Of a stretch of 37,267 bases of DNA, positions 1,036 to 7,235 are shown piece after piece. The notes below the pieces were generated by a model that was not told where the DNA came from, made no database searches, and saw only the letters and a list, made by a program, of their open reading frames with translations. The stretch comes from Guillardia theta CCMP2712 (Eukaryota > Protista > Cryptophyta), in contig NW_005434431.1 in NCBI RefSeq assembly GCF_000315625.1, positions 26,996 through 64,262 of the forward strand, given 5' to 3'. The number at the start of each line of letters is the position of its first letter. Position 1 is the first letter of the stretch. Both the position numbers and the translations under genes were made by a program.

Positions 1036-1060
1036 GAAAATAAAAACGATTCTTTATTTC
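1036..1060. terminator. Shared bidirectional 3'-end/polyadenylation signal between convergent genes
   Basis: gaaaataaaaacgattctttatttc carries AATAAA on both strands as an imperfect inverted repeat in the 26-bp gap between two stop codons. Confidence 0.5.
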
Positions 1061-1577
1061 AAGAAAGACTCTCAACAGTCTCTACACCGCAGCTCTCCCA
1101 GAACCCGACGCTCTCGGGCAGTGGGTTCCATGCCTCCCTGATCCGGAGCTTCTGTACAAACAGGCGACCGAGCCCCTGTCTCCGCATGTCTGGCCTCACC
1201 CAGATACACTCCGCGATATCGTCTTGCATGATGCAGTAGCAGGGCAGCAGGTAATCACCGGGGTCACCGTTCATGTCCACACAGAAAAGAGGATCGAGCT
1301 TGCACCCCAGACGAAACATCTCCTCGGTCTCGATTACCTTGAGTCCATAAAGTGTTTTCTCTTTGAAAGCATTCAGAATAGTGTTATACGGCACATTTCC
1401 TGGGCTGCCCTCAATGATCTGTCGGAAGATGATCCAGAAATCACCCTCGTCCTCAACCCTGAAAGCGGTGGCATCCCCGTAGTGTTCCTTCCACAACACA
1501 CGCAACATCGCGTGTGAGATGCGATAATTCCTATGGAAGCTACACAAGCCTTCATACATCGGCCATTGTTCTTGCAT
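1059..1577 (-). CDS. GNAT-family N-acetyltransferase, intronless, 172 aa
   Basis: C-terminal IWVRPDMRRQGLGRLF (acetyl-CoA-binding motif A, R/QxxGxG) and PESVGFWESCG (motif B). Confidence 0.8.
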   Translation of the reverse strand: MQEQWPMYEGLCSFHRNYRISHAMLRVLWKEHYGDATAFRVEDEGDFWIIFRQIIEGSPGNVPYNTILNAFKEKTLYGLKVIETEEMFRLGCKLDPLFCVDMNGDPGDYLLPCYCIMQDDIAECIWVRPDMRRQGLGRLFVQKLRIREAWNPLPESVGFWESCGVETVESLS

Positions 1578-1579
1578 GA

Positions 1580-2005
1580 TGGGGTACTCAACGACTTGCC
1601 TTGAAGTTTTTTCGGGGTGGGGGGGGGGGGTATTTTTGGTACCATATACGGGTGGGGGAGGATGCTGGGGTGGGGGGTGGGGGTCGAAGAGTTTCCGAAT
1701 GATTCGGAGGGGGTCCGAAGGGAAGCGAATTACAATAAACTTTAGGGGGGCTAAAGTTGCCTAGAGAAGGGGGTAGGGTAGAGGATAATGGCCAAGAGGT
1801 GGGTAGGGGTGGGGTGAAGAGGCGCAAGTCCCTGCAGGGGTGGTGATATGGAAAAGTAGGAATGAGGGGTACATGGGATGATGAAAGGAATATGGAGGGG
1901 TGGGCTAAAAGGGGGCAATGGAAGATCAGGGGTGATCTTTACTCCTGCTGCAAGAAGATACCACCACCCGTCCTTACAAAGAAGAACTGGGGTGGGTGGG
2001 GTAGT
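1580..2005 (+). promoter_or_regulatory. G-rich, strand-skewed divergent intergenic region with GGGTA/GGGTG runs (G-quadruplex-prone)
   Basis: Dense G3+ tracts between the divergent starts at 1577 (-) and 2160 (+). The regulatory role is inferred from position only. Confidence 0.4.
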
Positions 2006-2159
2006 CAGCGAGTCAATCTTGGAAAAACGGATTGGTCGGGACGATTATAACAGGAGAAGGAAAGTTGTTACAAGACGACAACAACAACAAGTCTTGACGG
2101 TCTTGCGAACATCCCCCACACAACCATAACTCCGTTGACGAACAACCACACAGAAAATC

Positions 2160-5100
2160 ATGTCCAGCGCAGACCTTGCTTGCATTCCTGCAGGCCAACC
2201 AATGGTATGTGTTCCTTGCATGCTATGAAATGTTGACTTGATGATCGAGTGACTTTCGGGTGCAGAGCAACTTGGAAAGGCTGAAGAGCCTCCAGGCTGG
2301 TCTGTCAAAGAACCTTGCGGCAGTGACTCGGACGCTCTCCGGATCCAAACAAATCATCGAGGATGCAGAGACAGAAGTCGTAAAATATTTCGCTACCGTC
2401 CCGACAGACGAGGTACGTCTCCTCTTCCTCTCCTCCCCGTCCACTCTTCACCGTGACTGACCCCCTCCTCCTCTCCTTGTCCTCCCGCTCGCTGTCCTCC
2501 TCGCTCTTGACTCCTCGCGCTCCCTCCCCCAGTTGTCATCCAAGATCGCCTTCACCTTCAAGCGCTTCGACTCCGATCAAGGCGGCTTCCTCACGAGGTA
2601 TCGCCACTCCGCTACTGTCTGACGCAGCGAGCTGACGAGATCCAGGAATGACCTGGCGAGGGCGTTTGCGTTCATGGGGAAGCGGGTGAGCACGGAGGAG
2701 ATCGAGGCGTTGATGGACATCTACGACACCAACCGGGACGATCACATCGACTCGGTGCTTGCCATGGACGCTGCGAGAGGGGGGAGAAGCTGATGGGACT
2801 GCATGGGTGGCAGGGGGAGTTTGAGCACATGGTGCGGGTCAAGCTCAAGATCCCTTGCAAGCCCGACTGTCAAACCTGCAAGAAGATGTTCTCGTCTCCG
2901 AGCAGCAGGCCGGGAACATCCGACACGAGCGTACGAAGTCCGTCGGTGGTTTGCAAGTACGATTGCGGTTTCACGGGGACGGTAAGGCAGGTAGCAGAGC
3001 ATGAGTGTAGCTGCCCGCTGGCTCCATCATCGTCGACCTCTAACTCCAAGTTCTCCTCGAACAAGACCAAGTCAAGCCTATTCAACCGAACCCCCTCGGA
3101 CCCTACGGCTATGAGGGCAAGAAGGCAGACGGTAGCACTGGCGCGCCGCAACACGAAGTTCTATCATGTGCACGACAACGAGGGTGAAAGCACAATAGAG
3201 CAACGGCTGAGGAAACTCGAGCAGACAATCTCGAGCCATGAGATCTCGATATCGCGGACGCTCTCGACAGGAAGCAGGTAGGTCATAGTACTCCCGAATC
3301 TGCTCCCTCCCTCTCTCCTTTACAGTCTCTCTCTCTCCTTGTTCACAGCCTCTCTCTATAAGCCCTCTGCGATGCTGTCTGTGCTCGCTCATTCCTTTCC
3401 TGCCCTCAGCGTCCTGGAGAACAACAGCATGGTTGTCTTCGGAAGGCTGAGCGGCCTGTCGCCAGAGAAGGTGGGCGGCTCTTCTCTCAGGGGCAGACGC
3501 TGAGCCCTTGGGTTGCAGTTCGCGCAGAAGGTGCAAGACTTGTTCAAGTCCATCGACGTCGACGGGTCCAACTCGCTCTCTCGGTACCATCCGACCTGCC
3601 GGTGAGAGGGAGGGAGTGACTGGCGTAGGTCGGAGCTGCATAGCGCGTTTGCTCGGATGGGGCATGCCATGTCGAGCGAGAGCCTGGACAAGTGGATAGC
3701 GAGCTGCGACTCGGACGGGAACGGGGAGCTGGACATGGTGGGGAGGAGGGAGCCTGGAGGAAGGCAGAGGGACGACTGAGAGATGTGTGTTGCAGGAGGA
3801 GTTTTGTCACATCGCTTGCAAGGTGAACAAGTACCGCTGCCCGGCCACCTGTCCGGTATGCAAGCGGTCACCGGAGAAGGACGTGGACGACGACAAGGCT
3901 GCGGAGGAGAAGCGAAGGCTCAACTACGCTCAGCTGATGAAAGAAGTCATAGAGCCAGTGTGCAACCTCGCAGCGATCTACATCAAAGCGCAGGACGCAG
4001 ACTTCGACTTCAAGACGATCGAGCCCTTCATGGAGATCGTGACCTTCAGCGACGGCAACAGAATCTCCAAGAGCGGCAGCCTCACGGAGTCCATCATCTT
4101 CATCCTCCGCGGGCGGGTGGAGAAGCGGAAGAACAACGTCAAGCTCTCCATGCACAGCCGAGGGGATCACTTCGGGTCGCAGGAGATCCTAGAGCACAGG
4201 CCCCGACCGCACGACCTGATCGCTTGCGGGGCGTGCACGTGCTCGCAGCTGAAGCAGAGCCATCTGAAGCGAGCTGGGGTGATGCTGAAGCAGCTCGTGG
4301 AGCAGTTGGAACACACGATGCTTGATCACAGGCCGAAGGAGGCGGAAGCGACGTCGACAGTCTCACAAGGGGGCAGCGCTATCAAACCGATCGCTAACAA
4401 GATTGAGATAGTTCACAAGAAGCAAGAAGCTGCGCCAGGAGCTGGAGGGATAGACAGCCCGAACACCAAGAAAGATCTTCAAGACGTTCTGAGTCAAGTT
4501 GGGTCCCTGCTGGCTCGCGTGCCCTCCTTGAAAGCGACCAACGCCTCCTTCTTCGGCTCCCTGAGCGGGTTGAGTGGGATGGAGGTATTGACATTGACTG
4601 ATCCCCTACTACCTTCTTTCCCTCCCTCCTTACCTCTTGCTCTCCCGGTCCCTCTCCTCCCTCCTTGTCTGCGCCCTCGCTCCTACCTCCTTCCTCCCTG
4701 ACCTGGGGTGTTGCAGTTCTCTGCCAAGCTCAGAGAGATCTATGACGTGATGGACGCGGACAAGAGCGGCAAGATCGACCGGTAGAGTAGCACACGCAGC
4801 GGGGCGCGAGGGGCTGACGGGGAGCAGGAACGAGATCCAGGATGCTTTCCGCAAGATGGGGAAGGAGATCTCGGATGAGACGCTGGACAGCTTCATCGAG
4901 CAGACGGACGTGGACGGGGACGAGCAGATCGACCTGGTGAGAGACCAGAGAGACGAGCGGAGGAGGGAGAGGAGGAAGTGACGGCGAGAGCAGGAGGAGT
5001 TCGAGCACCTTGCGAGGGCACTGTACGAGCTTGACTGCGTGGAGGGCTGCAAGGTGTGCCGGATGTTCCCTACGTTGCAACGTGAAAAGAAAGCAAAGAT

Positions 5101-5893
5101 GAGAAGCATGATAGAGACGGTGAGGCGCGGGAGTGTGAGTGAGGCTGTGACGGAGAGTCTGCAGTCGAGCCTGCAAACTTTCTCGACGACGCTGATGGAC
5201 GGGTGGGCGCTACAAGATCAGCTGAAGGGGATGATCGATGACAGCTTCACTCGCCACTACTCCACTGAAGCCACCCTCGTCGACTCCTCCTCGTTCTCCT
5301 CCTCGTCCTCCTCCTCGTCCTCCTCGTCAGTGGTCAGATCCAACAGCGATCAGTGAGTTGCTTGATGTTGCACCAGAGCGATGACGATCGGAGCAGGTCG
5401 AACTTGCGTGTCTCATCATCTTCCGACGACAACAAGCAGGATGAGGAGAGGAAGGAGGAAGTCGCGCCAAAGCTCGAGAGCAGAGAGGAGCGGATGCGAC
5501 GCATGGCAGACGAGCTTAAGATGGAGTCAGCCAAGATGCACAACAGGAGGAGAAACTCCGAGCTCCATGTGAGTCTCTTGTGCGAGGCCTGTGCCCGCCT
5601 GCTGACGCTGCTGCTGTCTTGCTGTGACTGCAGCACATCGAGTTCCGCAACAAGATCGACAGGGACATCAACTTGGCCAAGAGCTACGAGAAAGGAGCGG
5701 TAGGAGAGGGGAGAGAGAAGCGAGAGGAGGAGGCGGGAGGGGGACTCGGGAGGAGGAGGGGGAGGGTGCCTGACGGTGCTGGCAGGGAGGGTCGGGCATG
5801 ACGCAGGCACAGCAGACTACCAACGAACTTCTGCACATGTTTGAGAAGGCGAAAAGGTTAGGGTATGTGAGGGACGGTGAGGATGTAGAGTAG
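2160..5893 (+). CDS. Multi-exon Ca2+/cyclic-nucleotide signalling protein: three EF-hand pairs, a cNMP-binding domain and Cys/His-rich motifs
   Basis: Spliced EF loops DSDQGGFLTRND, DTNRDDHIDSGE, DVDGSNSLSRSE, DSDGNGELDMEE, DADKSGKIDRNE, DVDGDEQIDLEE. CNB-like FILRGRV...GDHFGSQEILEHRPR. Short GT-AG introns join the exons in frame. Stop at 5891-5893, then AATAAA at ~5899. Confidence 0.8.
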
Positions 5894-6040
5894 AAGACAA
5901 TAAATGAACGTGTGATGATGTTTCCATTTTGTCATCAAGCTGAGAACTCCTCTTGCCCCTGCTCCTGCTCGACTCACCGGCTGCAAGCCTTCCTCTCCCT
6001 CCCTCCCCTTCCCCCACGATGCTGCATGGTCACTACCAAG

Positions 6041-7235
6041 TCAAGGTACCCTGAGGATTTTAATCTCCTTCATCGCCCCCTTCTCCTGCCACATCGGCCC
6101 CGCATCGTCGCCATGGCCTCAGGTCGCTCATCGTCGCCATGGCCTCAGGTCGCTCATCGTCGCCGTGGCCTCAGGTCGCTCATCGTCGCCATGGCCTCAG
6201 GTCGCTCATCGTCGCCGTGGCCTCAGGTCGCTTATCGTCGCCGTGGCCTCAGGTCGCTCATCGTCGCCGTGGCCTCAGGTCGCTTATCGTCGCCGTGGCC
6301 TCAGGTCGCTCATCGTCGCCATGGCCTCAGGTCGCTCATCGTCGCCATGGCCTCAGGTCGCTCATCGTCGCCATGGCCTCAGGTCGCTCATCGTCGCCAT
6401 GGCCTCAGGTCGCTCATCGTCGCCATGGCCTCAGGTCGCTCATCGTCGCCATGGCCTCAGGTCGCTCATCGTCGCCATGGCCTCAGGTCGCTCATCGTCG
6501 CCGTGGCCTCAGGTCGCTCATCGTCGCCGTGGCCTCAGGTCGCTCATCGTCGCCATGGCCTCAGGTCGCTCATCGTCGCCATGGCCTCAGGTCGCACATG
6601 CTCCATCACTCTGCTCGCGATCCGCTTGAGCCTCTCGTGCGACTCATAGCGAGAGACGGGCAGGAAGATGATATGCTCCATCATCCACTTCACGCACGGC
6701 AGCCGCTCCTCCTCCTCCTCCTCCTCCTCCTCCTCCTCTCCCCCTTCCCTCCTTCTTGCCCCTTTTTCCACCTCTTCCTCTCCTCTTCTCCTGCTTCTAG
6801 CTTCCTCCTCCTCTCCTTTGGTCCGCCTTCGCCTTGTTCTCTTCACCAGTGTGATCTGCGTAGATCCTGTGCTTGCGTCGATGCCATCTGCCTGCGTTCA
6901 CCACACGTGTGAAGAGACGAGGGAGAGGAGAGAAGAGGAGTGGAGAGGAGAGGAGAGGAGCGGAGGAGCCAAGGGACCTGAAGCTTGGTGACGAGCGAGC
7001 GAGGGTTCTTGACGAGTATGGGAAAGATCCAGAAGGAGTGCGACGAGGCGTCGAGGCCTGGCAGGAGGATGTTGGAGCCCACCAGCGGCTGAAGCAGCTT
7101 CACCATCTTCTGCCAATCACGAGGGATAAGAAAGTAGTAGGAGCAGGAGCAGGAGCAGGAGCAGGGAGGCAGGAGGCAGGAGGCAGGAGGCAGGAGGCAG
7201 GAGGCAGGAGGCAGGAGCAGGGAGGCAGGAGGCAA

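What the first reader, a model, noticed from the sequence alone, without database searches (positions are those of the whole stretch)
2533..5062. Thrice-repeated module: EF-hand pair capped by H-x9-C-x3-C-x2-C
Seen after splicing by eye: each calmodulin-like EF-hand pair ends with identical His/Cys spacing. The three are EFEHMVRVKLKIPCKPDCQTC (~2818-2879), EFCHIACKVNKYRCPATCPVC (~3799-3861) and EFEHLARALYELDCVEGCKVC (~4998-5059), while the intervening residues have diverged. Modules 2 and 3 are also preceded by FGxLSGLS. Inference: the His on the exit helix plus three Cys form a Zn site (or redox switch) coupled to a Ca2+ sensor lobe. I do not recognise this as a described domain.
Basis: partly seen in the sequence, partly recalled or inferred. 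Interest (0 to 1): 0.78.

Follow-up and report, generated by a model that had tools for sequence, protein, structure and literature searches.

The report
EF-hand pair with His-Cys3 cap
A cryptophyte alga has a small family of signalling proteins in which a calmodulin-like calcium-binding lobe always ends in one histidine and three cysteines at fixed spacing, probably a zinc site; I found this combination in no domain library, solved structure or paper that I could search.

Summary
Window 2533-5062 holds three EF-hand pairs. Each is split into exons of exactly 65 and 109 nt. Each is followed, at the start of the next exon, by E-F-x-H-x9-C-x3-C-x2-C (3 pattern hits, 0 expected by chance).

The module is not private to this gene. 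Five further genes (C34, C48, C130, C91, C52) also carry it. That gives 10 distinct modules, 23-47% identical in the cap, all with E, H and the three Cys at the same spacing, and mostly the same intron positions.

A transcript-derived Hanusia phi protein confirms one EF2-to-cap splice junction in frame. An intron-less copy (C91) scores as a full EF-hand pair (9.8e-17). Calmodulin and centrin structures align only up to the His. AlphaFold2 models the cap confidently (pLDDT 87-88).

The cap matched nothing in Pfam, the PDB or the papers searched. No relatives were found outside Guillardia and Hanusia, but those searches were insensitive.

Zinc binding is inferred, not shown, and the ligand geometry could not be measured. 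RNA evidence for the window gene itself is lacking.

Verdict: a real, lineage-restricted new variant of the EF-hand domain. The scan had not noted it before.

The parts
2266..2412 (+). Upstream exon ending in F-x-x-V-x-x-x-E, the lead-in helix before module 1. A possible first exon with an ATG lies about 60 nt upstream.
   Evidence: Open frame and GT donor at 2413. Similarity to the C55 paralog starts at 2263. The start codon is inferred only.
2533..2597 (+). Module 1, exon E1 (65 nt): EF-hand 1 entering helix and loop.
   Evidence: AG/GT bounded and in frame. Aligned with six other E1 exons.
2646..2754 (+). Module 1, exon E2 (109 nt): EF1 exit helix, linker, EF2 loop.
   Evidence: Pfam EF-hand_7 E 0.0025, partial. 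Alignment A4.
2814..2882 (+). Module 1 cap: EF2 exit helix with His, then C-x3-C-x2-C (start of exon 2814-3277).
   Evidence: Pattern hit 2817-2879. Invariant E, H, C, C, C in A1 and A8.
2952..3014 (+). Separate TRAF/Sina-like finger, C-x3-C-x11-H-x-C-x-C, in exon 3. It is not part of the repeated module.
   Evidence: Read from the translation. Pfam Sina_ZnF 17.5 bits, below the cut-off of 32.
3410..3470 (+). 61-nt exon with FGxLSGLS, the lead-in to module 2.
   Evidence: AG/GT bounded and in frame.
3519..3583 (+). Module 2, exon E1 (65 nt).
   Evidence: Weak EF-hand hits.
3629..3737 (+). Module 2, exon E2 (109 nt).
   Evidence: Pfam EF-hand_7 E 0.0033. Alignment A4.
3796..3864 (+). Module 2 cap (start of exon 3796-4584).
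   Evidence: Pattern hit 3799-3861. Identical in C55 and in metagenome contig L008.
4039..4272 (+). Cyclic-nucleotide-binding domain between modules 2 and 3.
   Evidence: Pfam cNMP_binding E 1.4e-08, 35 bits, above the cut-off, residues 82-159 of exon 7. 86 cNMP-domain hits in the exhaustive HMMER search.
4552..4584 (+). FGxLSGLS lead-in to module 3 (end of exon 7).
   Evidence: Translation of 3796-4584.
4717..4781 (+). Module 3, exon E1 (65 nt).
   Evidence: Pfam EF-hand_1 E 0.00057. Alignment A3.
4828..4936 (+). Module 3, exon E2 (109 nt).
   Evidence: Pfam EF-hand_7 E 0.00017. Alignment A4.
4994..5062 (+). Module 3 cap (start of exon 4994-5353).
   Evidence: Pattern hit 4997-5059. Conserved in C55 and L008.
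5063..5356 (+). C-terminal tail with a poly-Ser run. It ends at TGA 5354-5356, or continues if the GTGAGT donor at 5352 is used.
   Evidence: Frames read. C55 similarity resumes at 5466-5870. The true end is not resolved.

Best explanation
The window encodes a cytosolic multi-domain signalling protein of roughly 800 residues in the cryptophyte Guillardia theta. It carries three copies of a lineage-specific domain. Each copy is a calmodulin-like EF-hand pair whose last (exit) helix bears an invariant His. The chain then turns and ends in an invariant C-x3-C-x2-C knuckle. The most likely working is that His plus the three Cys hold one Zn2+ ion in a small Cys3His site. That site would pin the chain end back onto the exit helix of EF-hand 2 and make the lobe a stable, self-contained unit. 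Because the His sits three residues after the Glu at position 12 of the EF2 loop, metal occupancy or oxidation of the cap could also tune Ca2+ affinity or the lobe's opening. Shown: the module, its conservation, its EF-hand nature, its absence from the libraries searched, and a confidently modelled compact cap. Inferred: metal binding, the identity of the metal, and any coupling to Ca2+. The module spread by duplication together with its introns. It is combined with cNMP-binding domains (two genes) and IQ motifs (one gene), so the family probably works in Ca2+/cyclic-nucleotide signalling.
For: Pattern: 3 hits against 0 expected. All three modules have identical 65/109-nt exon structure. The same holds in C34, C48 and C130, and nearly so in C91 module 2, with 65/106 nt. 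E, H, C, C and C are invariant in 10 aligned rows with 23-30% identity to the first row. A tenth distinct module, C52, has a new intron inside the cap. Leave-one-out profiles recognise 5 of 6 caps at 29-37 bits. In 110 kb of six-frame translation around the family genes, the peptide pattern occurs only in the modules, plus one hit that runs through stop codons. The intron-less C91 module gives Pfam EF-hand_7 at 9.8e-17 over residues 43-107. Calmodulin chains align with E down to 1e-20 but stop 1-2 residues after the His. The AF2 model has mean pLDDT 82. The cap blocks 101-110 and 111-120 score 88 and 87, with a helix at 95-106, a loop, and a short helix at 115-118. The best structural matches are centrin and calmodulin lobes (Z 9.6, rmsd 2.2 over 74 residues), ending at model residues 107-109, before the first Cys. 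The Hanusia phi transcript-derived protein P0089 confirms the E2-to-cap junction in frame and the full motif in its second module. Against the 91%-identical metagenome copy, pN is 0.039, pS is 0.093 and intron divergence is 0.083. Of the five cap-less EF-hand genes of the same genome whose EF2 exit helix could be read, four lack His at that position. Precedent: Cys-containing Zn sites in the S100 EF-hand proteins S100A2 and S100A3, with effects on Ca2+ response (PMC2686732, PMC6637284).
Against: No metal was measured and no coordinates were available, so the four ligands were not shown to converge. The splicing of the window gene has no RNA support: 2 reads only. In Hanusia phi, the first module of the C91 ortholog reads C-x3-C-x6-C, and 24 residues that hold the third Cys are missing. 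In G. theta those 72 nt are bounded by GT..AG, so the cap may be dispensable or alternatively spliced in that module. Module 2 of the window scores poorly against the profile of the other caps, at 5.9 bits. The family is so far seen only in two closely related genera.
Confidence: 0.55

Rival explanations
1. The cap is a regulatory redox or metal switch rather than a structural site. The Cys3His site releases Zn or forms disulfides on oxidation, and this changes the Ca2+ response of the lobe.
For: The evidence is the same conservation as for the main reading. The His lies on the EF2 exit helix, right after the Ca2+-ligating Glu. In S100A2 and S100A12, Zn changes the Ca2+ response (PMC2686732).
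Against: Nothing in the sequence separates a switch from a structural site. No thioredoxin-like or other redox partner is encoded in these genes.
Confidence: 0.15
2. The three Cys bind an iron-sulfur cluster. C-x3-C-x2-C is the spacing of the radical-SAM [4Fe-4S] motif, and here His would be the fourth ligand.
For: The Cys spacing is identical in all modules.
Against: There is no Radical_SAM or other Fe-S family hit in any exon. The motif follows a helix of a roughly 70-residue EF-hand lobe, not the first strand of a TIM barrel. The motif is repeated three times in one protein, next to cNMP-binding and IQ elements.
Confidence: 0.06
3. The Cys cluster, which is followed by basic residues, is a site of S-acylation or another lipid modification that anchors the lobes to membranes.
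For: A Lys, Arg or Gln usually follows the last Cys. Cys clusters next to basic residues are typical of palmitoylated proteins (general knowledge).
Against: Acylation sites do not need fixed spacing or an invariant His ten residues upstream. The cap is internal in most copies. AF2 models it as an ordered element packed after the helix.
Confidence: 0.08
4. The conserved residues serve only protein packing or partner binding, without metal. Alternatively the window gene is a decaying duplicate, so the motif there has no function.
For: There is almost no RNA for the window gene. A near-identical second copy exists on C55.
Against: The frames are open across about 780 codons with intact splice sites. 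pN is lower than pS against the metagenome relative. An invariant Cys3His set in a presumably cytosolic protein is a classic metal signature (general knowledge).
Confidence: 0.12

Closest known systems
Calmodulin / centrin / troponin C EF-hand lobes (Pfam EF-hand_7, PF13499)
   Same: The module has two canonical 12-residue loops. Pfam E is 9.8e-17 for the contiguous copy. Calmodulin chains match with E down to 1e-20. Structural matches reach Z 9.6, rmsd 2.2 over 74 residues.
   Different: The known lobes end or pass into a linker where the cap begins, and none carries His-x9-C-x3-C-x2-C. Here the lobes occur singly, as repeated units inside long multi-domain proteins.
S100A2 / S100A3: EF-hand proteins with Cys-containing Zn2+ sites
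   Same: Each is an EF-hand pair that also binds Zn through Cys (and His), with effects on the Ca2+ response. S100A3 has the highest Cys content and Zn affinity of the family (PMC2686732, PMC6637284). This is a functional analogy for a Ca/Zn lobe.
   Different: S100 proteins are small vertebrate dimers with a 14-residue pseudo-EF loop (general knowledge). The modules here have two 12-residue loops, a different ligand spacing, and no sequence match to any S100 chain in the cap. This is not membership.
EF-hands followed by a zinc domain: C1 in diacylglycerol kinases and RasGRP, ZZ finger in dystrophin and ZZEF1 (general knowledge)
   Same: The architecture is alike: a Ca2+-binding EF-hand pair directly followed by a Cys/His zinc element.
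   Different: C1 (about 50 residues, 6 Cys and 2 His) and ZZ are independent two-zinc domains with their own Pfam models. No such hit was found. The cap is about 20 residues with a single Cys3His set, and one ligand lies inside the EF-hand helix itself.
TRAF / Sina-type zinc fingers
   Same: Exon 3 gives a weak Sina_ZnF hit spanning cap 1 and the downstream C-x3-C-x11-H-x-C-x-C element.
   Different: The score is 17.5 bits against a cut-off of 32. The ligand order in the cap is His first and then three Cys, with no 11-residue spacer. Caps 2 and 3 give no such hit.

Membership tests
EF-hand domain pair (PF13499) | Score above Pfam's gathering cut-off over a full helix-loop-helix pair. | tested here: met
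   The contiguous family member C91 module 1 scores 61.5 bits, E 9.8e-17, profile positions 1-67 of 67. The window's own modules give only partial exon-wise hits of 16-22 bits, because each is split by two introns.
EF-hand domain pair (PF13499) | 12-residue loops with acidic or polar ligands at positions 1, 3, 5 and 12, and Gly at 6. | tested here: met
   Alignments A3 and A4 show Asp at position 1 invariant in both loops, and Glu (Asp in module 1 EF1) at position 12. C91 module 2 has a loop one residue shorter, so it is probably inactive.
EF-hand domain pair (PF13499) | Four-helix EF-hand lobe fold. | tested here: met
   The AF2 model has mean pLDDT 82. Centrin and calmodulin lobes match at Z 9.0-9.6, rmsd 2.2-3.2.
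S100 proteins | N-terminal 14-residue pseudo-EF loop in a small protein of about 100 residues. | tested here: not met
   Both loops have 12 residues. The modules sit in proteins of several hundred residues.
TRAF/Sina zinc finger (PF21361 and relatives) | C-x(2-6)-C-x(11-12)-H-x(3-5)-C ligand order, and a Pfam score above the cut-off. | tested here: not met
   The score is 17.5 bits against a cut-off of 32, and only for module 1 together with a downstream element. The cap's ligand order is H, C, C, C.
Radical SAM (C-x3-C-x2-C cluster motif) | The motif lies in the loop after the first strand of a partial TIM barrel, with a PF04055 match. | tested here: not met
   No such Pfam hit at E up to 1. 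The motif follows an EF-hand helix.
C1 / ZZ zinc domains that follow EF-hands | A Cys/His domain of about 45-50 residues binding two Zn, matched by its Pfam model. | tested here: not met
   No C1 or ZZ hit in any cap-bearing exon. Only four conserved ligands lie within about 20 residues.
Structural Cys3His zinc site (generic) | Four ligands in tetrahedral geometry around Zn, with stoichiometric metal. | not testable with these tools
   The structure tool returns confidence and secondary structure only. No coordinates and no metal are available.

The most novel reading that the evidence does not exclude
The cap makes each EF-hand lobe a dual Ca2+/Zn2+ (or Ca2+/redox) sensor. This would be a new class of metal-coupled EF-hand domain, invented in the Guillardia/Hanusia lineage. 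It would be deployed as a repeatable cassette in proteins that also read cyclic nucleotides and bind calmodulin-like partners through IQ motifs, so that one polypeptide integrates several second messengers.
Probability: 0.2. Interest if true: 0.7.

Novelty: new variant of a known kind. Interest (0 to 1): 0.5.

Why it matters
EF-hand lobes are among the best-studied signalling domains. A conserved built-in Cys3His site, with one ligand on the Ca2+-site exit helix, would be a compact natural example of cross-talk between Ca2+ and Zn2+ or redox state. It would also be a ready-made scaffold for sensor engineering. In addition, it shows how a roughly 85-residue cassette, introns included, has been copied within and between genes of a cryptophyte and joined to cNMP-binding and IQ elements. 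That points to a signalling network in these algae that has not been described. The reach is limited as long as the family is known only from two close genera and no metal has been measured.

Tried and rejected
- **RNA evidence.** One raw-read RNA-Seq run and three contig sets were laid on 1600-5880. Only 2 reads were laid and no joints were seen.
- **Exhaustive HMMER search with exon 7.** It gave 87 hits. All but a 90%-identical metagenome ORF match the cNMP-binding region and not the cap, and none of them carries the motif. A cap profile would have been the better query for this single job.
- **Word search with a cap profile.** The first row was exon 3, so the length window was 85-270 aa. 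It gave 162 candidates, none at E up to 10.
- **Word search with exon 7.** It found only the metagenome ORF P0001.
- **JGI metagenome scan with a 3-cap alignment.** 128 stretches matched the patterns and none was confirmed.
- **PDB search with the cap profile.** No hits at E up to 10.
- **ESM Atlas, by features and by shape.** Only ordinary EF-hand clusters came up.
- **Literature searches.** Nothing was found on such a module.
- **dN/dS against the C55 paralog.** Rejected as unreliable. Introns are 99.7% identical while a few exon patches are strongly divergent or indel-rich, so the forced alignment produced false stops.
- **MAFFT with all exon fragments.** E1 exons and caps were misplaced, so that alignment was not used.
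- **L052 (contig C223).** It has EF-x-H followed by a (Cys-Ser)n run, and no C-x3-C-x2-C was found downstream. It was not counted as a family member.
  - The joined (spliced) protein of the window gene was never built for a search or a fold. Every search was exon by exon, by reference.
Full report
**What is in the window**

The region is part of a spliced eukaryotic gene on the + strand. Introns bounded by GT..AG that keep one frame open give these exons:
- 2533-2597, 2646-2754, 2814-3277
- 3410-3470
- 3519-3583, 3629-3737, 3796-4584
- 4717-4781, 4828-4936, 4994-5353

The three EF-hand pairs have the same gene structure. Each has a 65-nt exon (entering helix and loop of EF1), then a 109-nt exon (rest of EF1, linker, EF2 loop). 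The next exon opens with the EF2 exit helix and the Cys motif.

A degenerate DNA pattern for E-F-x-H-x9-C-x3-C-x2-C hits 2817-2879, 3799-3861 and 4997-5059 and nothing else. None is expected by chance.

The other parts of the gene are as follows.
- Pfam finds partial EF-hand pair matches in each 109-nt exon.
- Pfam finds a cyclic-nucleotide-binding domain above its cut-off in exon 7.
- FGxLSGLS precedes modules 2 and 3. Module 1 has a looser version at the same exon end.
- An upstream exon (2266-2412) and a possible short first exon can be read.
- The gene may run on past the TGA at 5354-5356 through a GTGAGT donor. Neither end is settled.

**Organism**

Two results fit a Guillardia-type cryptophyte. 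The assembly has 87.1 Mb in 669 contigs. A family member is 85% identical to a EukProt protein of Hanusia phi.

**The module is a family, not a coincidence in one gene**

Searching the window's own genome exon by exon gave two kinds of result.
- A near-identical paralog lies on contig C55: 95-98% identical in DNA, all three caps kept, and two substitutions between the Cys of cap 1.
- More distant modules lie in five other genes: C34, C48, C130, then C91 with two modules, and C52.

That makes ten distinct modules. In the cap alignment the rows are only 23-30% identical to the first, yet E, H and the three Cys are invariant.

Leave-one-out profiles recognise five of six caps at 29-37 bits. In about 110 kb of six-frame translation around these genes, the peptide pattern occurs only in the modules, plus one hit that runs through stop codons.

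The intron positions behave as follows.
- The two intron positions and the 65/109-nt exon sizes are shared by C34, C48 and C130.
- They are nearly shared by C91 module 2, which has 65/106 nt and a one-residue shorter EF2 loop.
- C91 module 1 has lost both introns.
- C52 has fused E1 and E2 and gained an intron inside the cap.

The unit was therefore copied with its introns and is older than the gene family's expansion.

Domain partners recur:
- cNMP-binding again in C130 (5e-17)
- two IQ motifs in C48 (2e-07)

Among the five cap-less EF-hand genes found by the same search whose EF2 exit helix could be read, four lack His at that helix position. His and the Cys cluster therefore go together.

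**Is the splicing real?**

For the window gene I could not show it. One raw-read RNA-Seq run and three contig sets gave two reads and no joints. The indirect support is of three kinds.
- The frames stay open over about 780 codons.
- Against a 91%-identical metagenome contig (L008), nonsynonymous divergence is 0.039, below synonymous divergence (0.093) and intron divergence (0.083). The EF-hand exons are almost unchanged.
- The transcript-derived Hanusia phi protein P0089 joins EF2 to the cap exactly at the predicted junction of C91 module 2, with the full motif.

**What the module is**

The intron-less C91 copy gave a contiguous reference (L037:994-1794:-).
- It is a full EF-hand pair for Pfam: 61.5 bits, E 9.8e-17.
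- Calmodulin chains of the PDB match with E down to 1e-20. Every alignment ends one or two residues after the His.
- I built an AlphaFold2 model on an alignment of this copy with E2 exons and caps of the other modules. Each row was an unaltered translation. Mean pLDDT is 82.
- In that model the exit helix spans 95-106. A loop follows, then a short helix at 115-118 carrying the second and third Cys. The blocks 101-110 and 111-120 have pLDDT 88 and 87.
- Solved centrin, calmodulin and troponin C lobes superpose on residues 31-109 (best Z 9.6, rmsd 2.2 Å over 74). They stop before the first Cys. ESM Atlas models behave the same way.

The cap is thus an ordered add-on to a normal EF-hand lobe.

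**Mechanism**

His lies three residues after the Glu at position 12 of the EF2 loop. A continuous helix cannot bring it next to a Cys ten residues on. So the chain must turn, as modelled, and fold the C-x3-C-x2-C knuckle back on the helix.

One His and three Cys form a complete tetrahedral ligand set. The proteins have no evident secretion signal and carry cytosolic signalling domains. I therefore take a single structural Zn2+ site as the most likely reading (0.55). A regulatory Zn or redox switch is the next reading (0.15).

S100A2 and S100A3 are a precedent for EF-hand pairs with Cys-containing Zn sites that alter the Ca2+ response (PMC2686732, PMC6637284). They are not relatives.

An Fe-S cluster, lipid modification or a non-metal role cannot be excluded from sequence alone.

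**A point against strict conservation**

In Hanusia phi the first module of the C91 ortholog lacks 24 residues that include the third Cys. It reads C-x3-C-x6-C. In G. theta the corresponding 72 nt are in frame and bounded by GT..AG. So either that stretch is removed from some transcripts or Hanusia has a deletion.

**Comparison with known families**

No Pfam model covers the cap.
- Only a sub-threshold Sina_ZnF hit appears. It depends on a separate TRAF-like finger downstream of cap 1.
- A chance metallothionein hit appears on cap 3.

A profile of the caps finds nothing in the PDB at E up to 10. Full-text searches found no description.

Searches for relatives elsewhere found only near-identical metagenome ORFs and the Hanusia protein. 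These negatives are weak for three reasons.
- The word search filters by length and needs shared 5-mers.
- The module is split by introns in genomic DNA.

Everything was done exon by exon, by reference.

**Verdict**

This is a real, conserved and apparently undescribed variant of the EF-hand domain, so far confined to Guillardia and Hanusia. A Cys3His zinc site is probable but untested. Interest is moderate (0.5).

Noticed in passing
window 2952-3014 (+): A separate C-x3-C-x11-H-x-C-x-C element sits in exon 3, after a Ser/Pro-rich linker. It resembles a TRAF/Sina finger, but the Pfam score (17.5 bits) is below the cut-off.
   Followed up: partly
window 6103-6599: A 26-bp tandem repeat has 19 copies at 97% matches, just downstream of the gene. 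It reads open in several frames and produced long spurious ORFs.
   Followed up: partly
window ~32719 (-) and ~33931 (+): Two inverted copies of a Cys-rich peptide motif (C-x-C-x3-C-x2-C followed by Gln-Arg) lie in open frames of 142 and 165 aa. They are unrelated to EF-hands.
   Followed up: no
window 1059-1577 (-): An ATG ORF of 172 aa carries an acetyltransferase-like R-R-Q-G-L-G motif. It is probably the neighbouring gene on the other strand.
   Followed up: no
L037 (G000:C91), minus strand, about nt 1371-1442 of the locus: An in-frame 72-nt stretch bounded by GT..AG lies inside the cap of C91 module 1. It is absent from the Hanusia phi transcript-derived ortholog. It is either an exitron-like alternative splice or a deletion, and removing it takes out the third Cys.
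   Followed up: partly
L039 (G000:C52:522826-525930): This is a tenth module. EF1 and EF2 share one exon, and a new intron splits the cap after the first Cys-Pro. It shows intron loss and gain within the family.
   Followed up: partly
G000:C55:~3900-6200 (-) compared with window 2263-5870: The paralog has introns 99.7% identical to the window, while patches of exon 3, the upstream exon and the tail differ strongly. The pattern suggests patchy gene conversion or fast-evolving low-complexity segments.
   Followed up: partly
window 4039-4272 (+): The phosphate-binding cassette of the cNMP-binding domain looks atypical by eye: the usual Arg-Ser/Thr-Ala is replaced. Ligand binding may be altered.
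   Followed up: no
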